From positions 62,001-126,000 of IMG/VR virus record IMGVR_UViG_3300042934_000980: a stretch of DNA of 64,000 nt. One strand, given 5' to 3'. The notes under the pieces are model-generated. The model searched no databases and was not told where the DNA came from. It saw only the letters and a program-made list of their open reading frames with translations. This document shows positions 30,216 to 50,202 of this stretch, in pieces (position 1 is the first letter of the stretch; each line of letters opens with the position of its first letter). The position numbers and the translations under genes were made by a program.

Positions 30216-30371
30216 CTAAGGGGCTTTGGTGGGTTCTGCTTGGGTTTGCACTGGCTGCTCGTCGAACAGGCGGTTGCGCACCTCTTCTACTAACTTATCA
30301 GCCGTCACCACCCCAGGCTTTTTCTTGCCCACAGTGACCTTGACCTTCTTACGCCCCAGCTGGCTTAGCAT
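30216..30371 (-). CDS. 51-aa basic peptide (not in the ORF track)
   Basis: MLSQLGRKKVKVTVGKKKPGVVTADKLVEEVRNRLFDEQPVQTQAEPTKAP; SD AGGAGG; overlaps the end of the peptidase gene. Confidence 0.6.
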   Translation of the reverse strand: MLSQLGRKKVKVTVGKKKPGVVTADKLVEEVRNRLFDEQPVQTQAEPTKAP

Positions 30372-31053
30372 CAACTACCTCCTGCTTAATGTCTTCTTGA
30401 GCGCGTACAACATTACTGCCGTTTTCGTCCTCAGGGTCACACTTAGGCACGGCATTAGCCTTCCTGATGGCCGCGTCGACGATCTCTTTAACCTGTTCGG
30501 GGGTAAAGGGGGTGTTTTCCGGCAGCTGGGGTAAAGGCCTTTTGCTAAGCACCTCCGGAACCCCTGGGTGGGTCCAGGTCTGCACTTCCCCGCCGCTGCT
30601 AACGTCCAACCGGATCGCCTGCTCAATGGCCTTCACCGAAGACCCTGTCACGCTCATCACCGCATGGGCAATGATCTGCCCACTACCCGCTGAACACGGC
30701 CCGGCATTGGGAGACAACACGTTCATGTCCACCGGCCGCCTGTGGTTACGGTCCACGCCCCAATACCAGCAAATCCCCTGCTCACTGACCGCCATGATCA
30801 GAAAGTCCAAGTACTCAGGCCCCACAATCCGAGTACGGTGGGTAACCCCTTTTTGCAGTTCTTCAAAGATGTAAGGCAACGCTTCAGGATTACCGCACAA
30901 AGCGATTGCCAAAATACGCTGGCCCTGAATTTCCCAGTACTGCTCGTCAGTGGGGGTAAAGATCTTCTTGTGGTCATAGAGCATGACCATTTCGTGTTGG
31001 GTGGCCTGTGAATCTGTGGCAAGGACTTTACCGTTCCAAGCAAGCGTTGTCAT
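30349..31053 (-). CDS. HslV/proteasome-type Ntn-hydrolase peptidase
   Basis: N-terminal MTTLAW...ATDSQAT, KKIF, AGSG, LDVSSGG. Confidence 0.8.
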   Translation of the reverse strand: MTTLAWNGKVLATDSQATQHEMVMLYDHKKIFTPTDEQYWEIQGQRILAIALCGNPEALPYIFEELQKGVTHRTRIVGPEYLDFLIMAVSEQGICWYWGVDRNHRRPVDMNVLSPNAGPCSAGSGQIIAHAVMSVTGSSVKAIEQAIRLDVSSGGEVQTWTHPGVPEVLSKRPLPQLPENTPFTPEQVKEIVDAAIRKANAVPKCDPEDENGSNVVRAQEDIKQEVVDAKPAGA

Positions 31054-31408: not shown

Positions 31409-32254
31409 ATGAACCCGGTAGACTACGCCATCAACAGGGTGATGGGAGCAGACTTGGATGAATACATCCTCAAGCTTGCTTTTGAAAACCCCAACACCAA
31501 CTACATGGGCAACTGGTACAACGTAGCCAGCCCCACCTCTATCCAACAAGGCATTCGTGAACAGGTGATCTTTCGCACTGTTCTACCCATGTGCAACGTC
31601 AACGGTGGTAAGACCGAATTCATTGACCTCTCTGGCAGCCAGATGATGGACAAGGGTAACGGTTGCGTTGAAGTTAACGTGCCTGATGTCTGGACTGGGG
31701 GACGCAAGATCATTTCGGTCAGCGAAGTCTACCTAGGCTCTATGACCTCAGCCACCGGCATGCTGGGCATGAGCATCAACGATGGCGGTAACTGTGGGCA
31801 GGGTTCGATCTCGGACATGATGCAGGGGATGATCGACGGACTCTCCCCATCGCGTTCAATGCCAATCACGTACACCAACATCCAGATGACGGGCAACAAC
31901 TGCTTTGTGATCTTTGGGTTGAACTCCGGTACGTTCTCTATGACTGCCAAGTGCATCCTAGAGTATGACGAAGGGATGTCCAGCATCCACCCGCGTCACT
32001 ACGACTACTTTGCTGAGTTGGTCGAGCTGGCGGTGAAGGCTTACATCTACCGCAAGTGCCGGCGTCCAACCCAGGAAGCGGTGATCCGTTCGGGTGTGGC
32101 GATTGAAGCCATTAAAGACGACATCGAAGAGATGCGCGACTCCTGGACTCAGTACAAGGAATACTTTGACACTGTATGGAAACGCTGCATGGCGTACAGT
32201 GATACCCAACTTAAAGTCGAGGCTGTACGCATGAGTGTGCCGCGTCGCATGTAA
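31409..32254 (+). CDS. Conserved virion-associated protein (phiKZ gp42-like)
   Basis: MNPVDYAINRV N-terminus, ELAVKAYIY motif, SD AGGAG. Confidence 0.6.
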   Translation: MNPVDYAINRVMGADLDEYILKLAFENPNTNYMGNWYNVASPTSIQQGIREQVIFRTVLPMCNVNGGKTEFIDLSGSQMMDKGNGCVEVNVPDVWTGGRKIISVSEVYLGSMTSATGMLGMSINDGGNCGQGSISDMMQGMIDGLSPSRSMPITYTNIQMTGNNCFVIFGLNSGTFSMTAKCILEYDEGMSSIHPRHYDYFAELVELAVKAYIYRKCRRPTQEAVIRSGVAIEAIKDDIEEMRDSWTQYKEYFDTVWKRCMAYSDTQLKVEAVRMSVPRRM

Positions 32255-32265
32255 GGAACTCCTTC

Positions 32266-33699
32266 ATGTTAAAAGATCAATACGACCCGTCTGACCTAAG
32301 CCATGAACCGGTCACGGACTGGACAGGGATTGAAGCGAGCGTTTCCAGTTTGTTTGAAGGGGCGGAAGAACATTCCTACCTCGCCCGCCAAGGCCTGTAC
32401 GCGTACCCGCTGTTCGCCGATGAAGTTCAACAGGTGCACGGCAACGAAGCTTTGCTGACCGGGGTAAACTTTGAGTCAGACAAAGCCATCCTGAACGTGT
32501 GTGAGAACTTTGGCGCCGAGCTTCAGATTACCCCTAAGTGGGCAAGCTTGGTACGCAAGTACGTCTACAACTTCATCACCCGCAAGGTGGGGTTGGTGGA
32601 CTACATGGAGTTCTTTGGCAGCCCTTACCTGGGTTTGCAGAAGATCACCTTTACCACCGGCGACCGTAACCAGTGGTTCACCGAGATCTTTGACGTGGAC
32701 GAGGAGGAACTCAAAGAGAACCTCCACGCCTGCAAAGCGGTCAATGCGGAATGGTCGGTGGTGGGGGATACCTTCAACCTGACCATTCCGTACCTGCTGT
32801 ACCGGATCTACCACAGCAAGCTGGACAAAGACACCAAGCACCAAGCGATGGTCGATGTCTTGTGCATGTACCACTACAAGTGCCTGACCTCCATCATCCA
32901 CAACGACTACCCGTTTACCGCGCGGCGTGAAGTGGTGCTGGAAACCTACAACCGCTTGAGTCTCAAATACGACATCAAGCGTTACGGGTCGTGGCGAGCA
33001 CTGATTGAGGCACGGGCGGAGTTTATCCTAAACCCCAGAACAGGCATTCACTTTGAAGCCTTCACCGCCATGACCGATGACAAGAAGATTGTCTACATGG
33101 TGGGGGATATCCAGAACCGGTTGCGTCGGGCGATTAACGACATCAACAAGGTGTTTCACGAAGTCAAGACCCGCACCAACATTGTGAAGGTGGACAACTC
33201 CAAGGTGAACTTGGGTGATGAGCTGACCATTAAGTCAGTGACCAAGGAAGTCACCCAGCATGCGATGTACATCGATCGCATCTTGGCGGAGGAAACCTCG
33301 TTCTTCAAAGAGGAGCTTGTGACTTATGCTGCCAGTGTCTTGGATAACGTACCCAGAGATAAACTCGCTTTTGTACTCCAGCAATTTCCGGCCGTCTACA
33401 AGAATCCGCGAAAGCCGCAGTACAAAGATTTTGTTGATGCTGTTACGATCCATCTCTTTGAGTACCTGCACACCAACAGCATCAAAAAGACCAAGGTCTA
33501 CGACGTGCTCACCAAAATGCGGGGCGCGTACGGGGCCCCGCGTAGCAAGAACGACACGGTCAAAATTATTCGAACGCTGGGCGACGGGATCGTCATGGAA
33601 CAGACGGGTGTTAAAACCCCTCAGACGATCACGGTGCTACGAACGGCGCTGAGTCTTTACTTTGTCCTGCGCATTTTGTCCAAGGACTATTACGAGTAA
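32266..33699 (+). CDS. Conserved virion/head protein (phiKZ gp32-like)
   Basis: FFGSPYLG, KYDIKRYGSW, RTALSLYFVLR; acidic N-terminal propeptide-like region. Confidence 0.65.
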   Translation: MLKDQYDPSDLSHEPVTDWTGIEASVSSLFEGAEEHSYLARQGLYAYPLFADEVQQVHGNEALLTGVNFESDKAILNVCENFGAELQITPKWASLVRKYVYNFITRKVGLVDYMEFFGSPYLGLQKITFTTGDRNQWFTEIFDVDEEELKENLHACKAVNAEWSVVGDTFNLTIPYLLYRIYHSKLDKDTKHQAMVDVLCMYHYKCLTSIIHNDYPFTARREVVLETYNRLSLKYDIKRYGSWRALIEARAEFILNPRTGIHFEAFTAMTDDKKIVYMVGDIQNRLRRAINDINKVFHEVKTRTNIVKVDNSKVNLGDELTIKSVTKEVTQHAMYIDRILAEETSFFKEELVTYAASVLDNVPRDKLAFVLQQFPAVYKNPRKPQYKDFVDAVTIHLFEYLHTNSIKKTKVYDVLTKMRGAYGAPRSKNDTVKIIRTLGDGIVMEQTGVKTPQTITVLRTALSLYFVLRILSKDYYE

Positions 33700-33711
33700 A
33701 AGGAACGCGGT

Positions 33712-34272
33712 ATGCATTACTTCCTGGTCAACGGTACCAACTTCACAGTCACCGAAGCTGTGTGTGACAAAATCTCCGAGGTGCTGTCAGTTCAGTACAA
33801 GGCGAAGGTTGAAACCATCACCGACCCGTGGCTCGATTCTCAGAACTCGGACTCGGAGGCTAAAGAGCTGCGGGTAAAACTGACCCACATGGACGTCAAG
33901 CCCCAGGAAAAGCTTAGCCTGATCTTGGACTGGCGCGAGCGGCTCATGAAAGAGGTGGTGGTGCCTGCCATGGGTGAAGGCAACATTGTGCTGTACCACG
34001 GCGGCTTCTTGCAGGATGACCTGTTTATTGACAAAACCCAGATCCCGTTTGATTTGGTGTTGCGCGAGAACCTGGAAATGCTGCAAAGCATCGGTGGGAT
34101 TGCCTACCCTGCAGGGTCGGTGGTGGTGCAGTCCACGCTTAACAAGCTGGAAGAGATCACCCTGTTTGAAGAAAAGGCGCGTAAGCTTGGGGAAAGCATG
34201 TCCCGGTTTAAACGCTTGCGTCACACCGTCAGAACGTCCAACGAAGACCTTCAAATGCTACTCAATGCGTAA
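33712..34272 (+). CDS. Thymidylate kinase-like protein lacking the catalytic motifs
   Basis: Colinear by-eye similarity to the Tmk at 49300-49971, but no P-loop GK and no DR motif. Confidence 0.6.
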   Translation: MHYFLVNGTNFTVTEAVCDKISEVLSVQYKAKVETITDPWLDSQNSDSEAKELRVKLTHMDVKPQEKLSLILDWRERLMKEVVVPAMGEGNIVLYHGGFLQDDLFIDKTQIPFDLVLRENLEMLQSIGGIAYPAGSVVVQSTLNKLEEITLFEEKARKLGESMSRFKRLRHTVRTSNEDLQMLLNA

Positions 34273-34281
34273 AGCAAACAT

Positions 34282-34317
34282 ACCCCCTACCCCAGCCTTG
34301 CGGTCGGGGTAGGGGGT
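34282..34317. terminator. Bidirectional terminator between convergent genes
   Basis: ACCCCCTACCCC...GGGGTAGGGGGT 12-bp stem. Confidence 0.7.
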
Positions 34318-34320
34318 TAT

Positions 34321-37300
34321 TCACGCTGCTAGTGCGTTGTTGCGGGCAATCAACATCCGTTTGTTGCGTTCGATTTTCGCCTCCTCCAGCAAGACGTCGA
34401 TGGTCATGAACCGTGCAGCCTCTGGTGGCAACACACGTGTCAGTTTCCTGATCTCAGCTTCAAGCCTGACGGCCAGCAGGTTGTCGTTGGTCTGTAGAAG
34501 CTCCTCGGTCAACTGCTGAGCACGGGCCTTGACTTTGTTCAGGAACTGGGCAACGTGGGGCTCCAGCTCTGCTTGCTGACGACCGTTAGCCTGGTTCATG
34601 ATGTTCTTGGTATCGGTTAAGGCAATGCCTGCCGAAATCCCATACAACGACTTGTTCATCCCAAGCTTGATAAACCAATAGGTCAACAGCCAGCTGATCA
34701 CCAAGTCATCGTGCATCTTCGTATCGTGGTCAATCCGCCCGCCTTTGGTGCGCAGGTTGATCAACTCATCGGCCAGCTTGTCGTAGTTAATCCCGTAACC
34801 GGTGTTAGCCACCGCTTCTTGGATCAGCCCGTACAGTGTTTCACGTGACCGACTGGTGGTGTTAAAGCCAAAGTACTGCTTAAACTTCAGGTAGAAGTTC
34901 TTCTGGCGATACGCAAACTTGGTGTTTTGAACCTCCTTGAACTCCTTCTCATGGCTGACCGTGTCTTGGTAGATCTGGTTATAGATCCGGGTGAACGGGT
35001 CCATGCCCTTTGCCGGCAACATGATCAACAGGTTATCGATCATGTGGTGGGCGTAGTTGCGTTCAATCACCAGCAGGCTGTTGTTCAACACCCCCAACAG
35101 GTCCACAATGATGGAAGTCACATCGTCCAAGAAGGCCAACGGGTAACGCCCCACCCCAACCACCTTGCCCGTCTTCATGCTGCGAATGATGATGGTGCAG
35201 GCGTCCTTGTTGATAGCAGAGGAGGTGTCCACCCCGATCAGGAAGTAATCGTTGTAGTCTTTACGCCCCATTTCAATCAACTGCTGCTGCGTGACGAAGA
35301 AGTCCATGAACAGGCCGCTGGAAACGTACTCCTTGCTCCAGACCACCTGGTTTTTGCAGTTGTTGATGGCCTCACGCGTCACGTCATCAAACAGGCGGTT
35401 CTCCCCGTCTTCCACCCACATCAACAGCAAGTCGATCTTAGCCTTGCTAAGGCTTAGGTTCAGGCTGTCGATCGTTTCCTTTACCCAATCTTTATCCTTA
35501 CCCAACTGCATGTAGTTGTACACCATGGCCACTGAAGGCGCGGTGGTTTCCTTAGGCGAGGCACGCAATAGCCGTTCTTTCAAATGGCTTTCGCTAAACG
35601 AGTCAAAGAACTTCTCCCGCCATTCGGTTGAGTTCATCAACTTCTCAAACATGAACTTCCCGCTTGGGTGCAGGGTGGTGTTTGGGGTGGTGATGAAACT
35701 GATCCCGTACGGCTTGCCTTGGATGCGGGCGTTGGCCATGGCGGTCAGAGCCGACGGCGCACAGCCGTTGATGATCTCCTCGATAAAGCTGATGTACGCA
35801 GGCTCGTCATAAGTCGTGGTTTCAACCGTCAAACCCCGCCCCAAGTCCCCCGCCGCATCACGCCCCATTTGCGGTACGTTGATGTTCAAGCTGTTGGTGT
35901 ATTCCTCACCAAAGGCCTTGTAGGTCAGGTAGTTACCGCTGTCCTTGTCCCGCCACGTGGGGTTAACCAAGTAGCTGGGCATACAGGTACGGATCTTCTT
36001 GACCGCGTCAATGAACTGCGCCCGGTTATCGTTTTTCAGGGTGATCAGGTGACTCTTGTAACCCCGCCCGTTGATGTAGGTCAGCCAGAAGTTAATCACC
36101 TGCACCGACACCGTGTTGTGGGTCACGATAAAGTCGTCGGTGATGTACAGGTGATCTTGGCTGTCCACCTCAATGCAGGTGGCCTCATCGTCACCGCTAA
36201 AGGCGATGCTTTCCAACCACAACCGATTGTCCACCTCAGGCTGCTTGTCCTTACGGAAGCGGAAATACGCCAGCTCCTTAGGCAAGGTGACTGTCAAGGT
36301 ATCCCGGATAGGCCGTGCCGTTCCGCCAAGTCCTCGAATCACATACGCCAGCTGATTGGCTATAAGCTCGTTAGGCGCCTTTAAGGTCAAAGTCTTACCG
36401 ATCTTCAGCCCTTCATCGAAAAACGCCTGTACAAGCTTCAGGCGGTCTTCTAGCGCACCTTCGAGGTAGTGCTGGGGCAACCCCACGCTTAAATCGAAGT
36501 TGAACGCGTTCCCGTCCCGGCGTTTAACCGTACGCAGCTTCTTGTCCTTGCTGGTCATCAGGGTCTGGGGCAGGACTTCTTCTAAGTACGCGTCTTGCTC
36601 CTTGCTCAGGCTTCGCCCTTGCAGGTTGCCTTCAACCAAGCCTGCATTGACCATCCAGCCAAAGAGGTACGGGTCCAAGGTAAACTTCTGCTCCCGACCC
36701 TTCTCAGCTTTGATCAGCGGCGCTTCATAGGCATGCCCTTGCGCCAGCCCGGTGATCAGATCCGCTGTGGTGTAGTCGTCGGTAATCCCACGGCGTGAAG
36801 AAGTGCCTCGGGAATAGTCCTTCAACGTCCACAGGTGTTCAGCGCCCGCCTCGGTGGTGCGTCCGTCACTGAAGGTCAGAGTGTACATCCGAAGCTTGCC
36901 TTGGGGGTGTACCCCAATCACCGTGCTGGTCTTACCGTTGGGCGCAATCAGCACATCCCCGGTACGCACCTCCCCAATCTTCTTCCACACATCCTTGAAG
37001 ACCAGGTTCCCGCTCTTCTCGCACTTGACCCGAACCAAGCTGCGGTTAGGCTGCATCTTGCCCTGCTGACGGGGCATGATCATGTAGGTGGTGATGTGGT
37101 TTAAGTAGTTCCAGATAAAACTGATGTTGCCCCGATTGGCCATAAAGCTTTGGTCGGGCTTGAGCATGCACACTTCACGCAGGAAGTACCAGAAGTTAGT
37201 CCGGCACTCTTCGGCGATCATGAGCTTTTGCTCGTTGGTCAGATCGTCAGCGTGCGGGTCCACCCCTTGCAGCATGCGGTTATTGAGCTGCAGCAGGAAA

Positions 37301-37599
37301 TAGTAGTTCTTAATCCCCTGTTGACGGAAGACCTCGGCAGTGCGCAGAAAACTGGTATTACCGGTCTTAAGGTCCGGGGCTGCCTTGTAGTTGTAAAAGT
37401 CTTTGAGAAAGCGCACAGTCTTGATGCTGTGCAAACTGTCCTCGTTAAAGTGCGCCAGCAACAGTTCGTCTTCGGTGCGAGTGTCGGAATCAATCCGTAA
37501 CCGCTTATCGTCCATCAACGTTCTGGGTAGATTCTGGGCACCCAAGTAGTTCACCAACTTCTTGGCAAACTCAAGCTTTGCGTCAATCACTTCACCCAT
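34321..37599 (-). CDS. terL: Terminase large subunit (phiKZ gp25-like), intein-containing
   Basis: Walker A MPRQQGK|T, GRGLT, Walker B YDEP, ITTP, RNase H-like IGVDTS, VIERN, HDDLVISW; start MGEVID with SD AAGGGG. Confidence 0.93.
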   Translation of the reverse strand: MGEVIDAKLEFAKKLVNYLGAQNLPRTLMDDKRLRIDSDTRTEDELLLAHFNEDSLHSIKTVRFLKDFYNYKAAPDLKTGNTSFLRTAEVFRQQGIKNYYFLLQLNNRMLQGVDPHADDLTNEQKLMIAEECRTNFWYFLREVCMLKPDQSFMANRGNISFIWNYLNHITTYMIMPRQQGKMQPNRSLVRVKCEKSGNLVFKDVWKKIGEVRTGDVLIAPNGKTSTVIGVHPQGKLRMYTLTFSDGRTTEAGAEHLWTLKDYSRGTSSRRGITDDYTTADLITGLAQGHAYEAPLIKAEKGREQKFTLDPYLFGWMVNAGLVEGNLQGRSLSKEQDAYLEEVLPQTLMTSKDKKLRTVKRRDGNAFNFDLSVGLPQHYLEGALEDRLKLVQAFFDEGLKIGKTLTLKAPNELIANQLAYVIRGLGGTARPIRDTLTVTLPKELAYFRFRKDKQPEVDNRLWLESIAFSGDDEATCIEVDSQDHLYITDDFIVTHNTVSVQVINFWLTYINGRGYKSHLITLKNDNRAQFIDAVKKIRTCMPSYLVNPTWRDKDSGNYLTYKAFGEEYTNSLNINVPQMGRDAAGDLGRGLTVETTTYDEPAYISFIEEIINGCAPSALTAMANARIQGKPYGISFITTPNTTLHPSGKFMFEKLMNSTEWREKFFDSFSESHLKERLLRASPKETTAPSVAMVYNYMQLGKDKDWVKETIDSLNLSLSKAKIDLLLMWVEDGENRLFDDVTREAINNCKNQVVWSKEYVSSGLFMDFFVTQQQLIEMGRKDYNDYFLIGVDTSSAINKDACTIIIRSMKTGKVVGVGRYPLAFLDDVTSIIVDLLGVLNNSLLVIERNYAHHMIDNLLIMLPAKGMDPFTRIYNQIYQDTVSHEKEFKEVQNTKFAYRQKNFYLKFKQYFGFNTTSRSRETLYGLIQEAVANTGYGINYDKLADELINLRTKGGRIDHDTKMHDDLVISWLLTYWFIKLGMNKSLYGISAGIALTDTKNIMNQANGRQQAELEPHVAQFLNKVKARAQQLTEELLQTNDNLLAVRLEAEIRKLTRVLPPEAARFMTIDVLLEEAKIERNKRMLIARNNALAA
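36115..37056 (-). mobile_element. Class 3 intein (314 aa) in the terminase P-loop, with a degenerate LAGLIDADG domain
   Basis: Starts MQPNRS; block B AGAEHLW; block F EATCIEV; ends IVTHN|T. Confidence 0.92.
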
Positions 37600-37694
37600 G
37601 AGTGAACCCCTTGCGTTAAAAATATCCAAATGCAAAAAATAAAGGGTAGGCACAGCCTGAGGTTTCCCCCAGGCTGCTTTTCGCTACCGAACCG

Positions 37695-49299: not shown

Positions 49300-49971
49300 T
49301 CAGGCTTCTTGCTGCATCTTGACTTCAGCAATCAATGCATCGGCGTACGCTTTGACGTGGAGCCAGACGTTGTCTTCTGGCAAGTCCGCCGGGATCAGCC
49401 TGTAGGCGTGCGGCTTAGCCCTGTAGGCGCCCAAGTAGACCTCACGCATACGTTCGGCCTTGGTGGTCTGCAAAACGTCCAGAGCGTCCTTCTGGCCCCG
49501 TTGCTCAAGGCGTGAGGCAAACAGGCTGGGGTGCCCGTCGAGCAGGAACGTGACATCTGGGTAGGCCGGACCGTGAACCAAACGGTGCAGCGTGTTCAAT
49601 ACGCTAAGGTCCACCCCACCCGAACCGCCTTGGTAGGCAAGTGTGGAATCCAAGAAGCGGTCAGTGATCACCATGTAACCGCGAGCCAGGTACGGTTGCA
49701 CGACCTTCTCCAAATGATCTGCTCGCGCAGCGTTCATTAGCAAGGCCAAGGTGGTCGACGAAAGGTTAAGCTCCTTGTTGTCCAGCCCAGGAAAATAGCC
49801 TTTAACCCCGTCGCGGATAAATTCTGCAAACGGAGTGCCGCCCGGCTCACGGGTACGGATCACTTTGATACCCGCTTCTTTCATGTATTCAAAAAGCCGG
49901 TCCACCACGGTGGTCTTTCCGGAGCCATCCAACCCTTCTACTGCAATAAACTTACCCTTTGGTACTGGCAT
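49300..49971 (-). CDS. tmk: Thymidylate kinase
   Basis: EGLDGSGKT, TREPGGT, DRFLDSTLAYQG. Confidence 0.95.
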   Translation of the reverse strand: MPVPKGKFIAVEGLDGSGKTTVVDRLFEYMKEAGIKVIRTREPGGTPFAEFIRDGVKGYFPGLDNKELNLSSTTLALLMNAARADHLEKVVQPYLARGYMVITDRFLDSTLAYQGGSGGVDLSVLNTLHRLVHGPAYPDVTFLLDGHPSLFASRLEQRGQKDALDVLQTTKAERMREVYLGAYRAKPHAYRLIPADLPEDNVWLHVKAYADALIAEVKMQQEA

Positions 49972-50058
49972 TCCCACATCCTTAAAAATATAAAAATCGT
50001 AATAAATCCCTCCCCTCCAAAAGAGGGGAGGGATCGAGCTTACTGCTTGCGAACCGAC

Positions 50059-50202
50059 TTACTTAGTCGGTTTGGCAACCCCGATGGTGCCGCTGCTACC
50101 AGGACCTGCCGGAAGGCTGGTTGGACGCTGCGACGGCATCGTTTCTTGTTGACGACCCAGGCCTTTGAGCAAATCAGGGTTAACCTTGGTTTCTTGAGTC
50201 AT
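50059..50202 (-). CDS. 47-aa micropeptide, paralog of 50262-50444 (not in the ORF track)
   Basis: MTQETKVNPDLLKGLGRQQETMPSQRPTSLPAGPGSSGTIGVAKPTK; SD AAGAAGG; terminator at ~50006-50034. Confidence 0.7.
   Translation of the reverse strand: MTQETKVNPDLLKGLGRQQETMPSQRPTSLPAGPGSSGTIGVAKPTK

What the first reader, a model, noticed from the sequence alone, without database searches (positions are those of the whole stretch)
33712..34272. Catalytically dead thymidylate kinase paralog in a late virion operon
Seen: colinear similarity to the intact Tmk in this window: YFLVNGTNFTVTEAVCDKI vs FIAVEGLDGSGKTTVVDRL; VETITDPW vs VIRTREPG; LSLILDWRERLMKEVVVPAMGEGNIVLYHGGFLQD vs LALLMNAARADHLEKVVQPYLARGYMVITDRFLDS; AYPAGSVVV vs AYPDVTFLL. 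The P-loop Lys and the DR motif are lost while the frame stays intact. Inference: a pseudokinase repurposed as a nucleotide or signal sponge, a Tmk regulator via heterodimers, or a structural protein.
Basis: partly seen in the sequence, partly recalled or inferred. Interest (0 to 1): 0.6.

Follow-up and report, generated by a model that had tools for sequence, protein, structure and literature searches.

The report
Dead thymidylate kinase in jumbo phage
A soil jumbo phage related to Pseudomonas phage EL keeps, in the place where its relatives carry their thymidylate kinase, a well-conserved copy of that enzyme that has lost every part needed for catalysis, while a second, normal thymidylate kinase sits 15 kb away.

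Summary
The ORF at 33712-34272 (+) is real and encodes 186 aa. It descends from thymidylate kinase (Tmk). Its similarity to the window's own Tmk is no better than chance. It is clearly related to the Tmk that other nucleus-forming jumbo phages (Chimalliviridae) encode at the same genomic position: Smith-Waterman z about 16, hhalign 97.8%, and the only hits outside its own family among 1.84 billion proteins. The AlphaFold model matches only Tmk structures (Z 12-13.6). The P-loop GK[ST], the DR motif, the YQ pair and the whole LID are gone in all 11 family representatives. The family forms one clade on a long stem inside the positional Tmk clade. It evolves under purifying selection (dN/dS 0.11-0.25). 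All 9 near-complete genomes that carry it also carry exactly one canonical, bacterial-type Tmk. Six relatives with an intact positional Tmk have no second copy. The likeliest history is that a second kinase took over catalysis and the dead original was retained for a non-catalytic role. That role is unknown. New conservation lies outside the old ATP site, which favours a binding role. "Paralog of the window's Tmk" and the inference from the virion operon are not.

The parts
33712..34272 (+). Dead thymidylate-kinase homolog (186 aa), positional ortholog of the Chimalliviridae core Tmk
   Evidence: ORF. Homology to positional Tmks. TMPK fold. dN/dS 0.11-0.25.
33733..33759 (+). Remnant of the P-loop (residues 8-16, GTNFTVTEA). 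In Tmks this is G-x-D-x-x-G-K-[ST]-T. It is not conserved within the dead family.
   Evidence: Column table; alignments.
33934..33936 (+). Arg75, the retained helix-3 arginine, invariant in the dead family and in all Tmks compared
33997..34017 (+). Remnant of the D-R-[FYS]...S-T segment, now H-G-G-F-L-Q-D. Gly97 is nearly invariant and Gly98 and Asp102 are invariant in the dead family.
34048..34116 (+). Newly conserved block, residues 113-135 (F..VLRENLEMLQSIGGIAYPAG): helix before strand 4 plus the loop. It is variable in active positional Tmks.
   Evidence: Conservation table; secondary structure of the model.
33700..33704 (+). Ribosome-binding site AAGGA, 7 nt before the ATG
   Evidence: Sequence read.
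34283..34316 (.). GC-rich hairpin between the convergent stops of the dead Tmk and the terminase; likely a bidirectional terminator
   Evidence: Fold dG -36.8, z -4.2; unique in the window.
31409..32254 (+). DUF7484 gene (phrog_3179), first gene of the conserved three-gene row
   Evidence: synteny.
32266..33699 (+). 477-aa gene (phrog_2921; annotated as a virion or head structural protein in some relatives), immediately upstream
34321..37653 (-). Terminase large subunit, convergent with the dead Tmk
   Evidence: PHROG hits; EL gp011 in the same arrangement.
49300..49977 (-). Intact canonical thymidylate kinase (P-loop GLDGSGKTT, DRF, YQ, LID arginines). The likely true start is the ATG at 49971.
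   Evidence: PF02223 E 9.5e-42; only Pfam-level Tmk in the 220-kb genome; nearest relatives are orthologs in related phages, then bacterial dTMP kinases at 37-44% identity.

Best explanation
The gene is the vertically inherited ortholog of the core thymidylate kinase of nucleus-forming jumbo phages (Chimalliviridae core gene cg32, the homolog of RAY gp311). On the stem of the EL-like clade it lost its ATP site (P-loop and LID) and its phosphoryl-transfer and dTMP-contact residues (DR, S-T, Y-Q). Every genome in this clade also carries a second, canonical bacterial-type Tmk about 12-20 kb away. That second enzyme is assumed to do the kinase work. After a burst of change the dead copy settled into a conserved 178-189 aa family under purifying selection, so it is not a pseudogene. 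It most likely acts without catalysis, by binding. New constraint appears at residues 113-135 and 155-171 and at the N-terminus (M-H-Y). By the topology of the parallel sheet, these lie at the N-terminal ends of the neighbouring strands 1, 4 and 5, on the face opposite the old active site. A remodelled remnant of the dTMP cleft (Asp38, Arg75, Gly97-Gly98, Asp102) is also kept.

Shown: descent, fold, loss of motifs, selection, and co-occurrence with a second Tmk.
Inferred: loss of kinase activity, displacement as the cause, and a binding role.
Unknown: the partner or ligand.
For: Homology and orthology:
- Smith-Waterman against RisingSun gp6 scores 111 against shuffles of 31 +/- 5.
- The family HMM scores 36 bits; hhalign gives 97.8%.
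- The profile search of 1.84e9 proteins returns only the family and four RisingSun-type Tmks.
- The row DUF7484 / 477-aa gene / Tmk is found in RisingSun, FishSpeaker, Aphrodite1, Kc263, PS1 and OBP. The same row carries the dead copy in L019, L021 and L027.
- In the Tmk tree the dead family is monophyletic (100/100) on a stem of 2.98 substitutions per site. It is nested with RisingSun-type positional Tmks (97/96).
- In the neighbour-gene tree, EL plus 12 phages with the dead copy form one clade (SH-aLRT 99), sister to RisingSun and FishSpeaker.

Fold: AlphaFold model with pLDDT 80 and pTM 0.81. The top 50 Foldseek hits are all Tmk. Z is 12.3-13.6. ESM Atlas TM is 0.70.

Motif loss.

Selection: dN/dS is 0.13 for L019 against L021 and 0.11-0.25 in 7 unsaturated pairs. 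The 477-aa neighbour gives 0.05-0.09.

Co-occurrence: 9 of 9 genomes at least 90% complete that carry the dead copy have exactly one Pfam-level Tmk elsewhere. 6 of 6 phages with an intact positional Tmk have no other.

Origin of the intact Tmk: it is as close to bacterial dTMP kinases (37-44%) as to EL's Tmk (39%).

Literature: Tmk is a cytoplasmic core gene of the family (PMC10299810). It is dispensable in phage PCH45 (bioRxiv 10.64898/2025.12.19.695335).
Against: There is no biochemical evidence, so loss of activity is inferred from motifs alone. EL, a member of the same clade, has no detectable copy at this position. The retained function is therefore dispensable in at least one lineage. 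No partner or ligand is identified. The placement of the newly conserved patch rests on fold topology and the model's secondary structure, not on coordinates, which the tools did not provide. The order of events (second Tmk first, decay second) is not resolved. Both changes map to the same stem.
Confidence: 0.6

Rival explanations
1. It is a regulatory or oligomerisation subunit of the intact Tmk. The dead copy would form hetero-oligomers with the canonical Tmk and tune its activity, as the inactive rPPK3 subunit does for cPPK3 in Sulfolobus.
For: Strict co-occurrence with one intact Tmk in 9 of 9 near-complete genomes. There is a precedent for an inactive Tmk-superfamily subunit that activates an active one (PMC12995831).
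Against: The two genes are 12-20 kb apart, on opposite strands in this window, and not in one operon. EL has the intact Tmk without the dead copy. The intact Tmk locus swaps alleles between close phages while the dead copy stays put, which is unexpected for a co-adapted pair. The two proteins belong to distant Tmk lineages.
Confidence: 0.12
2. It is a ligand binder: a nucleotide or signal sponge or sensor. The remodelled NMP cleft would bind a nucleotide-like molecule without turnover, for example to counter a host defence signal.
For: Asp38, Arg75, Gly97-Gly98 and Asp102 are conserved around the former dTMP site. Phage sponges exist as a class (general knowledge).
Against: Most cationic phosphate-binding residues are gone: the P-loop Lys, the DR Arg, Arg54 and the LID arginines. 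The cleft gained acidic residues, and the family pI is 4.9-5.3. There is no similarity to any PADLOC, Pfam or PHROG family. The strongest new conservation lies away from the cleft.
Confidence: 0.08
3. It is an enzyme with new chemistry that uses the conserved acidic residues (Asp38, Asp102, Glu122) on the old scaffold.
For: Invariant Asp, Glu and Arg residues and two invariant glycines are typical of active sites. A long stem followed by tight conservation fits a gain of new function.
Against: No known enzyme family matches by sequence or fold other than Tmk. No cofactor motif is present.
Confidence: 0.1
4. It is a virion or assembly protein, as its position after two putative structural genes and before the terminase suggested to the first reader.
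For: It is co-directional and tightly spaced (12-nt gaps) with two genes annotated as virion structural in OBP, Aphrodite1 and RisingSun.
Against: Active Tmks occupy the same position in relatives and are cytoplasmic metabolic enzymes (PMC10299810, PMC12908238). The crude-lysate proteome table of RisingSun read does not list gp6, the Tmk at this position. The context is inherited, not acquired.
Confidence: 0.05
5. It is a decaying relic with no function.
For: All catalytic motifs are lost. The gene is absent from EL. Tmk is dispensable in PCH45 (bioRxiv 10.64898/2025.12.19.695335).
Against: The ORF is intact in all 10 genomes examined and in 11 cluster representatives down to 23% identity. dN/dS is 0.11-0.25. 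There are 14 invariant columns, and new conserved motifs appear that active Tmks lack.
Confidence: 0.05

Closest known systems
Chimalliviridae core thymidylate kinase (cg32; RAY gp311, RisingSun gp6, FishSpeaker/OBP/Aphrodite1 Tmk)
   Same: Same genomic position after the DUF7484 and phrog_2921 genes. Same fold. Significant profile similarity. The gene tree is congruent with the phage tree.
   Different: It lacks the P-loop GK[ST], DR, S-T, Y-Q and the LID. It is about 20-50 residues shorter. It carries new conserved motifs (residues 113-135 and 155-171). No Pfam PF02223 hit.
Canonical bacterial-type Tmk (PF02223; the window's own Tmk at 49300-49977, and EL Tmk)
   Same: Same superfamily and fold, with a colinear alignment.
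   Different: Pairwise similarity is at chance level. It is a different Tmk lineage, and it is catalytically complete.
rPPK3 (Saci_2020), the inactive Tmk-superfamily regulatory subunit of the Sulfolobus polyphosphate kinase (PMC12995831)
   Same: A member of the Tmk superfamily without activity of its own, kept beside an active relative in the same genome.
   Different: rPPK3 is encoded next to its partner and is shown to form hetero-oligomers. Here the genes are 15 kb apart, no complex is shown, and there is no link to polyphosphate.
MAGUK guanylate-kinase-like domain (from general knowledge, not tested here)
   Same: An NMP-kinase fold that lost the P-loop and catalysis and is used as a binding module.
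   Different: It is a eukaryotic domain derived from GMP kinase inside multidomain scaffolds. It has no sequence relation to this stand-alone phage protein.

Membership tests
Thymidylate kinase (PF02223, EC 2.7.4.9) | NMP-kinase / TMPK alpha-beta fold | tested here: met
   Model pLDDT 80. Top 50 Foldseek hits are all Tmk, E about 1e-6. Z 12.3-13.6, rmsd 3.1-3.9 A over 156-168 residues. ESM Atlas TM 0.70.
Thymidylate kinase (PF02223, EC 2.7.4.9) | Match to the curated family model | tested here: not met
   No PF02223 hit for any of 5 members at E up to 10. No NCBIfam hit. Homology shows only through profiles of phage positional Tmks.
Thymidylate kinase (PF02223, EC 2.7.4.9) | P-loop G-x-x-G-x-G-K-[ST] | tested here: not met
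   The positions read VTE, LTE, NVI, TVS and so on, and are not conserved in the 11 members.
Thymidylate kinase (PF02223, EC 2.7.4.9) | D-R-[YFH] motif after strand 3 and the Y-Q pair of the dTMP site | tested here: not met
   DR is replaced by [HDRKAV]-G and YQ by [FWY]-[IMVA].
Thymidylate kinase (PF02223, EC 2.7.4.9) | LID segment with arginines after strand 4 | tested here: not met
   About 15-20 residues are deleted relative to all Tmks aligned. The model has no LID helix.
Thymidylate kinase (PF02223, EC 2.7.4.9) | dTMP + ATP phosphotransfer activity | not testable with these tools
   Needs a coupled enzyme assay on purified protein.
Ortholog of the Chimalliviridae core Tmk (cg32) | Conserved position after the DUF7484 and phrog_2921 genes | tested here: met
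   active Tmks; dead copies.
Ortholog of the Chimalliviridae core Tmk (cg32) | Gene tree nested in the positional Tmk clade and congruent with the phage tree | tested here: met
   97/96 and 100/100; SH-aLRT 99. The long stem is a caveat for exact placement.
Regulatory pseudo-subunit of an active Tmk-like enzyme (rPPK3 type) | Physical complex with the active relative | tested here: inconclusive
   Complex prediction gave no answer. This is evidence neither for nor against.
Regulatory pseudo-subunit of an active Tmk-like enzyme (rPPK3 type) | Encoded adjacent to the active subunit | tested here: not met
   The genes are 15 kb apart and on opposite strands in the window, and 12-20 kb apart in relatives.
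Known anti-defence sponges / defence-associated families | Sequence similarity to a described family | tested here: not met
   No significant PADLOC, Pfam or PHROG match.

The most novel reading that the evidence does not exclude
The dead Tmk is the founder of a previously undescribed viral pseudo-NMP-kinase family. After its catalytic job was taken over, it gained a new function through a new surface opposite the old active site. It might act as an adaptor, a regulator or a sensor specific to EL-like soil jumbo phages.
Probability: 0.35. Interest if true: 0.6.

Novelty: new variant of a known kind. Interest (0 to 1): 0.45.

Why it matters
This is a clean natural example of gene displacement inside a phage core genome. 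The core enzyme's position is kept, its chemistry is erased, and the protein still evolves under constraint. It warns that counts of core genes based on homology can include non-enzymes. It suggests that the chimallivirus Tmk may have a second, non-catalytic role that explains its fixed place beside the head and terminase genes. It also offers a small, foldable protein on which to study how an NMP kinase becomes a pseudoenzyme. No curated family currently covers it.

Tried and rejected
- Nucleotide and protein BLAST of the ORF against 50,697 phage records found no match.
- Pfam, PHROG, NCBIfam and PADLOC scans found nothing significant.
- A profile search of PDB sequences returned only noise. 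The best hit was Lpg1083 at E 0.084, and no Tmk appeared.
- Direct comparison with the window's own Tmk was not significant.
- I tested whether EL gp012 and the EL intergenic stretch at this position are a remnant of the dead copy. No signal appeared in six frames (z < 2).
- The heterodimer prediction of the dead Tmk with the window's intact Tmk returned 'no answer' (score 0.00, controls not run). I do not count this as evidence either way.
The same contig was reached through IMG/VR as L041/G008.
- Expression: the only holders are soil DNA runs from 4 studies, and no RNA run holds the stretch. Contigs laid on the stretch show no differences inside the gene.
- The idea that the dead copy is a recent duplicate of the intact Tmk was rejected on the tree and the bit scores.

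Full report
**What the window is.** The window is bases 62001-126000 of a 220,495-bp IMG/VR virus record that is 96% complete. The 477-aa protein encoded at 32266-33699 is 73% identical to its homolog in Pseudomonas phage EL. It is 65% identical to that of Erwinia phage RisingSun and 41-58% identical to those of many other nucleus-forming jumbo phages. The same DNA occurs in soil metagenomes from four studies.

**The observation.** The ORF at 33712-34272 (+) encodes 186 aa. It has an AAGGA site 7 nt upstream of the ATG. It lies 12 nt after the stop of the preceding gene. A strong hairpin at 34283-34316 separates it from the convergent terminase gene (dG -36.8 kcal/mol, z -4.2). Taken alone, the similarity between the two proteins is not above chance. 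BLASTP gives E 0.25 and 1.8. Smith-Waterman scores 35 against 30 +/- 4.7 for shuffles. No Pfam, PHROG, NCBIfam or PADLOC model hits the ORF. A profile search of PDB sequences finds no Tmk.

**How homology was established.** In RisingSun, the gene downstream of the 477-aa homolog region is an annotated Tmk, gp6, with an intact P-loop.
- Smith-Waterman of the ORF against gp6 scores 111 against 31 +/- 5 for shuffles, with 0 of 1000 as high.
- An HMM of the ORF's family scores 36 bits on gp6 and lower on other chimallivirus Tmks.
- hhalign of the family against ten such Tmks gives 97.8% probability and E 1.3e-12 over 139 columns.
- An exhaustive profile search of 1.84 billion representative proteins returns only 11 hits. 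Seven are family members of 178-188 aa, none with GK[ST]. Four are intact RisingSun-type Tmks, at E 5e-7 to 5e-4.
- The AlphaFold2 model (pLDDT 80, pTM 0.81) matches only thymidylate kinases among its top 50 Foldseek hits. VIA-align gives Z 12.3-13.6 at rmsd 3.1-3.9 A over 156-168 residues.
- The ESM Atlas agrees, both by language-model features (0.93) and by structure (TM 0.70).

**Synteny.** The row DUF7484 gene / phrog_2921 gene / Tmk is present in RisingSun, FishSpeaker, Aphrodite1, Kc263, PS1 and OBP. Metagenomic contigs that carry relatives of the ORF show the same row with the dead copy in the Tmk position. Tmk is a published core gene of Chimalliviridae. It is cytoplasmic (RAY gp311; PMC10299810, PMC12908238). 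It is dispensable in phage PCH45 (gp50, cg32; bioRxiv 10.64898/2025.12.19.695335).

**What is lost and what is kept.** The column-by-column comparison covers 11 dead-family members, 13 positional Tmks and 7 canonical Tmks.
- The P-loop Asp and G-K-[ST]-T become variable residues.
- The Glu before the P-loop becomes Asn or Asp.
- The Pro of the E-P motif and Arg54 are lost.
- D-R becomes x-Gly.
- S-T becomes x-Asp.
- Y-Q becomes aromatic plus Ile, Met or Val.
- P-D becomes P-Ala.
- The LID is deleted.
- Kept: Tyr3, Val6, Asp/Glu38, Arg75, Pro85, Asn120, Pro133 and Phe152.
- Newly conserved and variable in active Tmks: Gly98, Asp102, Phe113, L-R-E-N-x-E-M-L-Q (117-125), G-G-x-A-Y-P-x-G (128-135), Lys155, R-F-K (165-167) and Tyr171.
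- Fourteen columns are invariant across members that are only 23-66% identical to the window's protein.

By the model's secondary structure, M-H-Y, G-G-x-A-Y-P-x-G and R-F-K precede strands 1, 4 and 5. In the parallel 2-3-1-4-5 sheet of NMP kinases these ends are neighbours, on the side opposite the catalytic cleft. This is an inference from topology. I had no coordinates to check it.

**Evolution.** In a maximum-likelihood tree of 41 Tmk-family proteins, the dead family is monophyletic (100/100) on a stem of 2.98 substitutions per site. It is nested with RisingSun-type and FishSpeaker positional Tmks (97/96). The canonical Tmks of the window, of EL and of related phages lie with bacterial dTMP kinases, outside the positional clade. 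A tree of the neighbouring 477-aa gene places EL and 12 phages with the dead copy in one clade (SH-aLRT 99), sister to RisingSun and FishSpeaker. The gene tree therefore follows the phage tree, and the loss of motifs maps to one stem.

dN/dS for the dead gene is 0.13 for L019 against L021. It is 0.11-0.25 in seven unsaturated genome pairs. The neighbour gene gives 0.05-0.09 and the canonical Tmk 0.04-0.24.

**Co-occurrence.** Ten IMG/VR contigs carry the dead gene. Eight of them are at least 90% complete. Each of those eight, and the window's own genome, has exactly one Pfam-level Tmk, 12-20 kb away. The only record without one is an 18%-complete fragment. RisingSun, FishSpeaker, Aphrodite1, Kc263, PS1 and OBP each have only the positional Tmk. 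EL has only the canonical Tmk, at the equivalent distance. It has an unrelated 98-aa ORF in the position of the dead copy. The window's canonical Tmk is 37-44% identical to bacterial dTMP kinases and 39% identical to EL's.

**Interpretation.** The likeliest history is functional displacement. A canonical Tmk is present throughout the EL-like clade. In that clade the ancestral core Tmk lost catalysis, and it was then retained under purifying selection. It was lost altogether in EL. Loss of kinase activity is inferred with high confidence. The ATP phosphate-binding loop is not merely mutated but unconstrained, and the LID is absent.

The retained role is not shown. I favour non-catalytic binding through the newly conserved surface. 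I rank the alternatives as follows:
- A regulatory partnership with the intact Tmk. It has a precedent in rPPK3 (PMC12995831). It is weakened by EL, by the gene distance and by allele exchange at the intact Tmk locus.
- A ligand sponge or sensor. This is weakened by the loss of cationic phosphate-binding residues.
- New chemistry on the old scaffold.
- A virion role. The context is inherited from active cytoplasmic Tmks.
- A functionless relic. This is contradicted by the selection data.

'Catalytically dead Tmk-like protein with an intact frame' is right, and the TMPK-fold prediction is met. 'Paralog of the intact Tmk' is better stated the other way round. The dead gene is the resident ortholog, and the intact gene belongs to another lineage. 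The 'late virion operon' is a conserved row that also holds active Tmks in relatives, so it is not evidence for a structural role.

**Novelty.** Two full-text searches found no described dead Tmk in phages. Pseudoenzymes on NMP-kinase folds are known elsewhere: rPPK3, and MAGUK GK domains from general knowledge. I rate this a new variant of a known kind, of moderate interest.

**Limits.** There is no biochemistry, no expression data and no model coordinates. The long stem makes the exact sister group uncertain. The complex prediction gave no answer.

Noticed in passing
window 34321-37653 (-): The terminase large subunit is 1110 aa. The PHROG terminase match stops at residue 199, just after '...RQQGK'. 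Residues about 209-370 hit unrelated PHROGs (helicase loader, primase). The sequence '...IVTHN' followed by 'TVSV' comes next. This looks like an intein-type insert inside the Walker A motif (GK|T). Pfam found no intein domain. EL's terminase is similarly long (3267 bp).
   Followed up: no
Loci L042-L050 (intact Tmk of genomes G001-G009) against L032-L041: The intact Tmk differs strongly between otherwise close phages. Between G002 and G003/G004/G007 its dN is 0.54-0.56. The dead Tmk shows dN 0.05-0.12 and the 477-aa gene 0.05-0.06 in the same comparisons. This suggests allele exchange or replacement at the intact-Tmk locus.
   Followed up: partly
L027:9313-9984, L026:737-1420, L028:11-457: In some relatives an Alginate_lyase2 (PF08787) gene, with or without a 110-aa ORF, is inserted next to the dead Tmk inside the conserved row.
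   Followed up: no
window 34280-34316: The terminator hairpin is unique in the window. Soil contigs of the same phage carry near-copies of it at other loci, with 2 differences and 1 gap. It may be a reused terminator motif.
   Followed up: partly
window 30349-31053 (-): An HslV-family peptidase homolog (phrog_1040, E 8e-23) lies upstream and divergent from the three-gene row, as in EL (gp015).
   Followed up: no
L003:6612-7337 (RisingSun gp6) and L010:3498-4130 (FishSpeaker Tmk): The closest intact relatives of the dead family already lack the Asp of the D-R motif (S-R-S and N-R-S), although the P-loop and the Arg are kept. This may be a first step of relaxed constraint in that lineage.
   Followed up: no
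L009 (EL 49940-50149, inside a 776-aa open frame): A weak PF02223 match (E 1.5e-4, below the cut-off) lies inside a long EL ORF, with the same in phage vB_PQ1.
   Followed up: no
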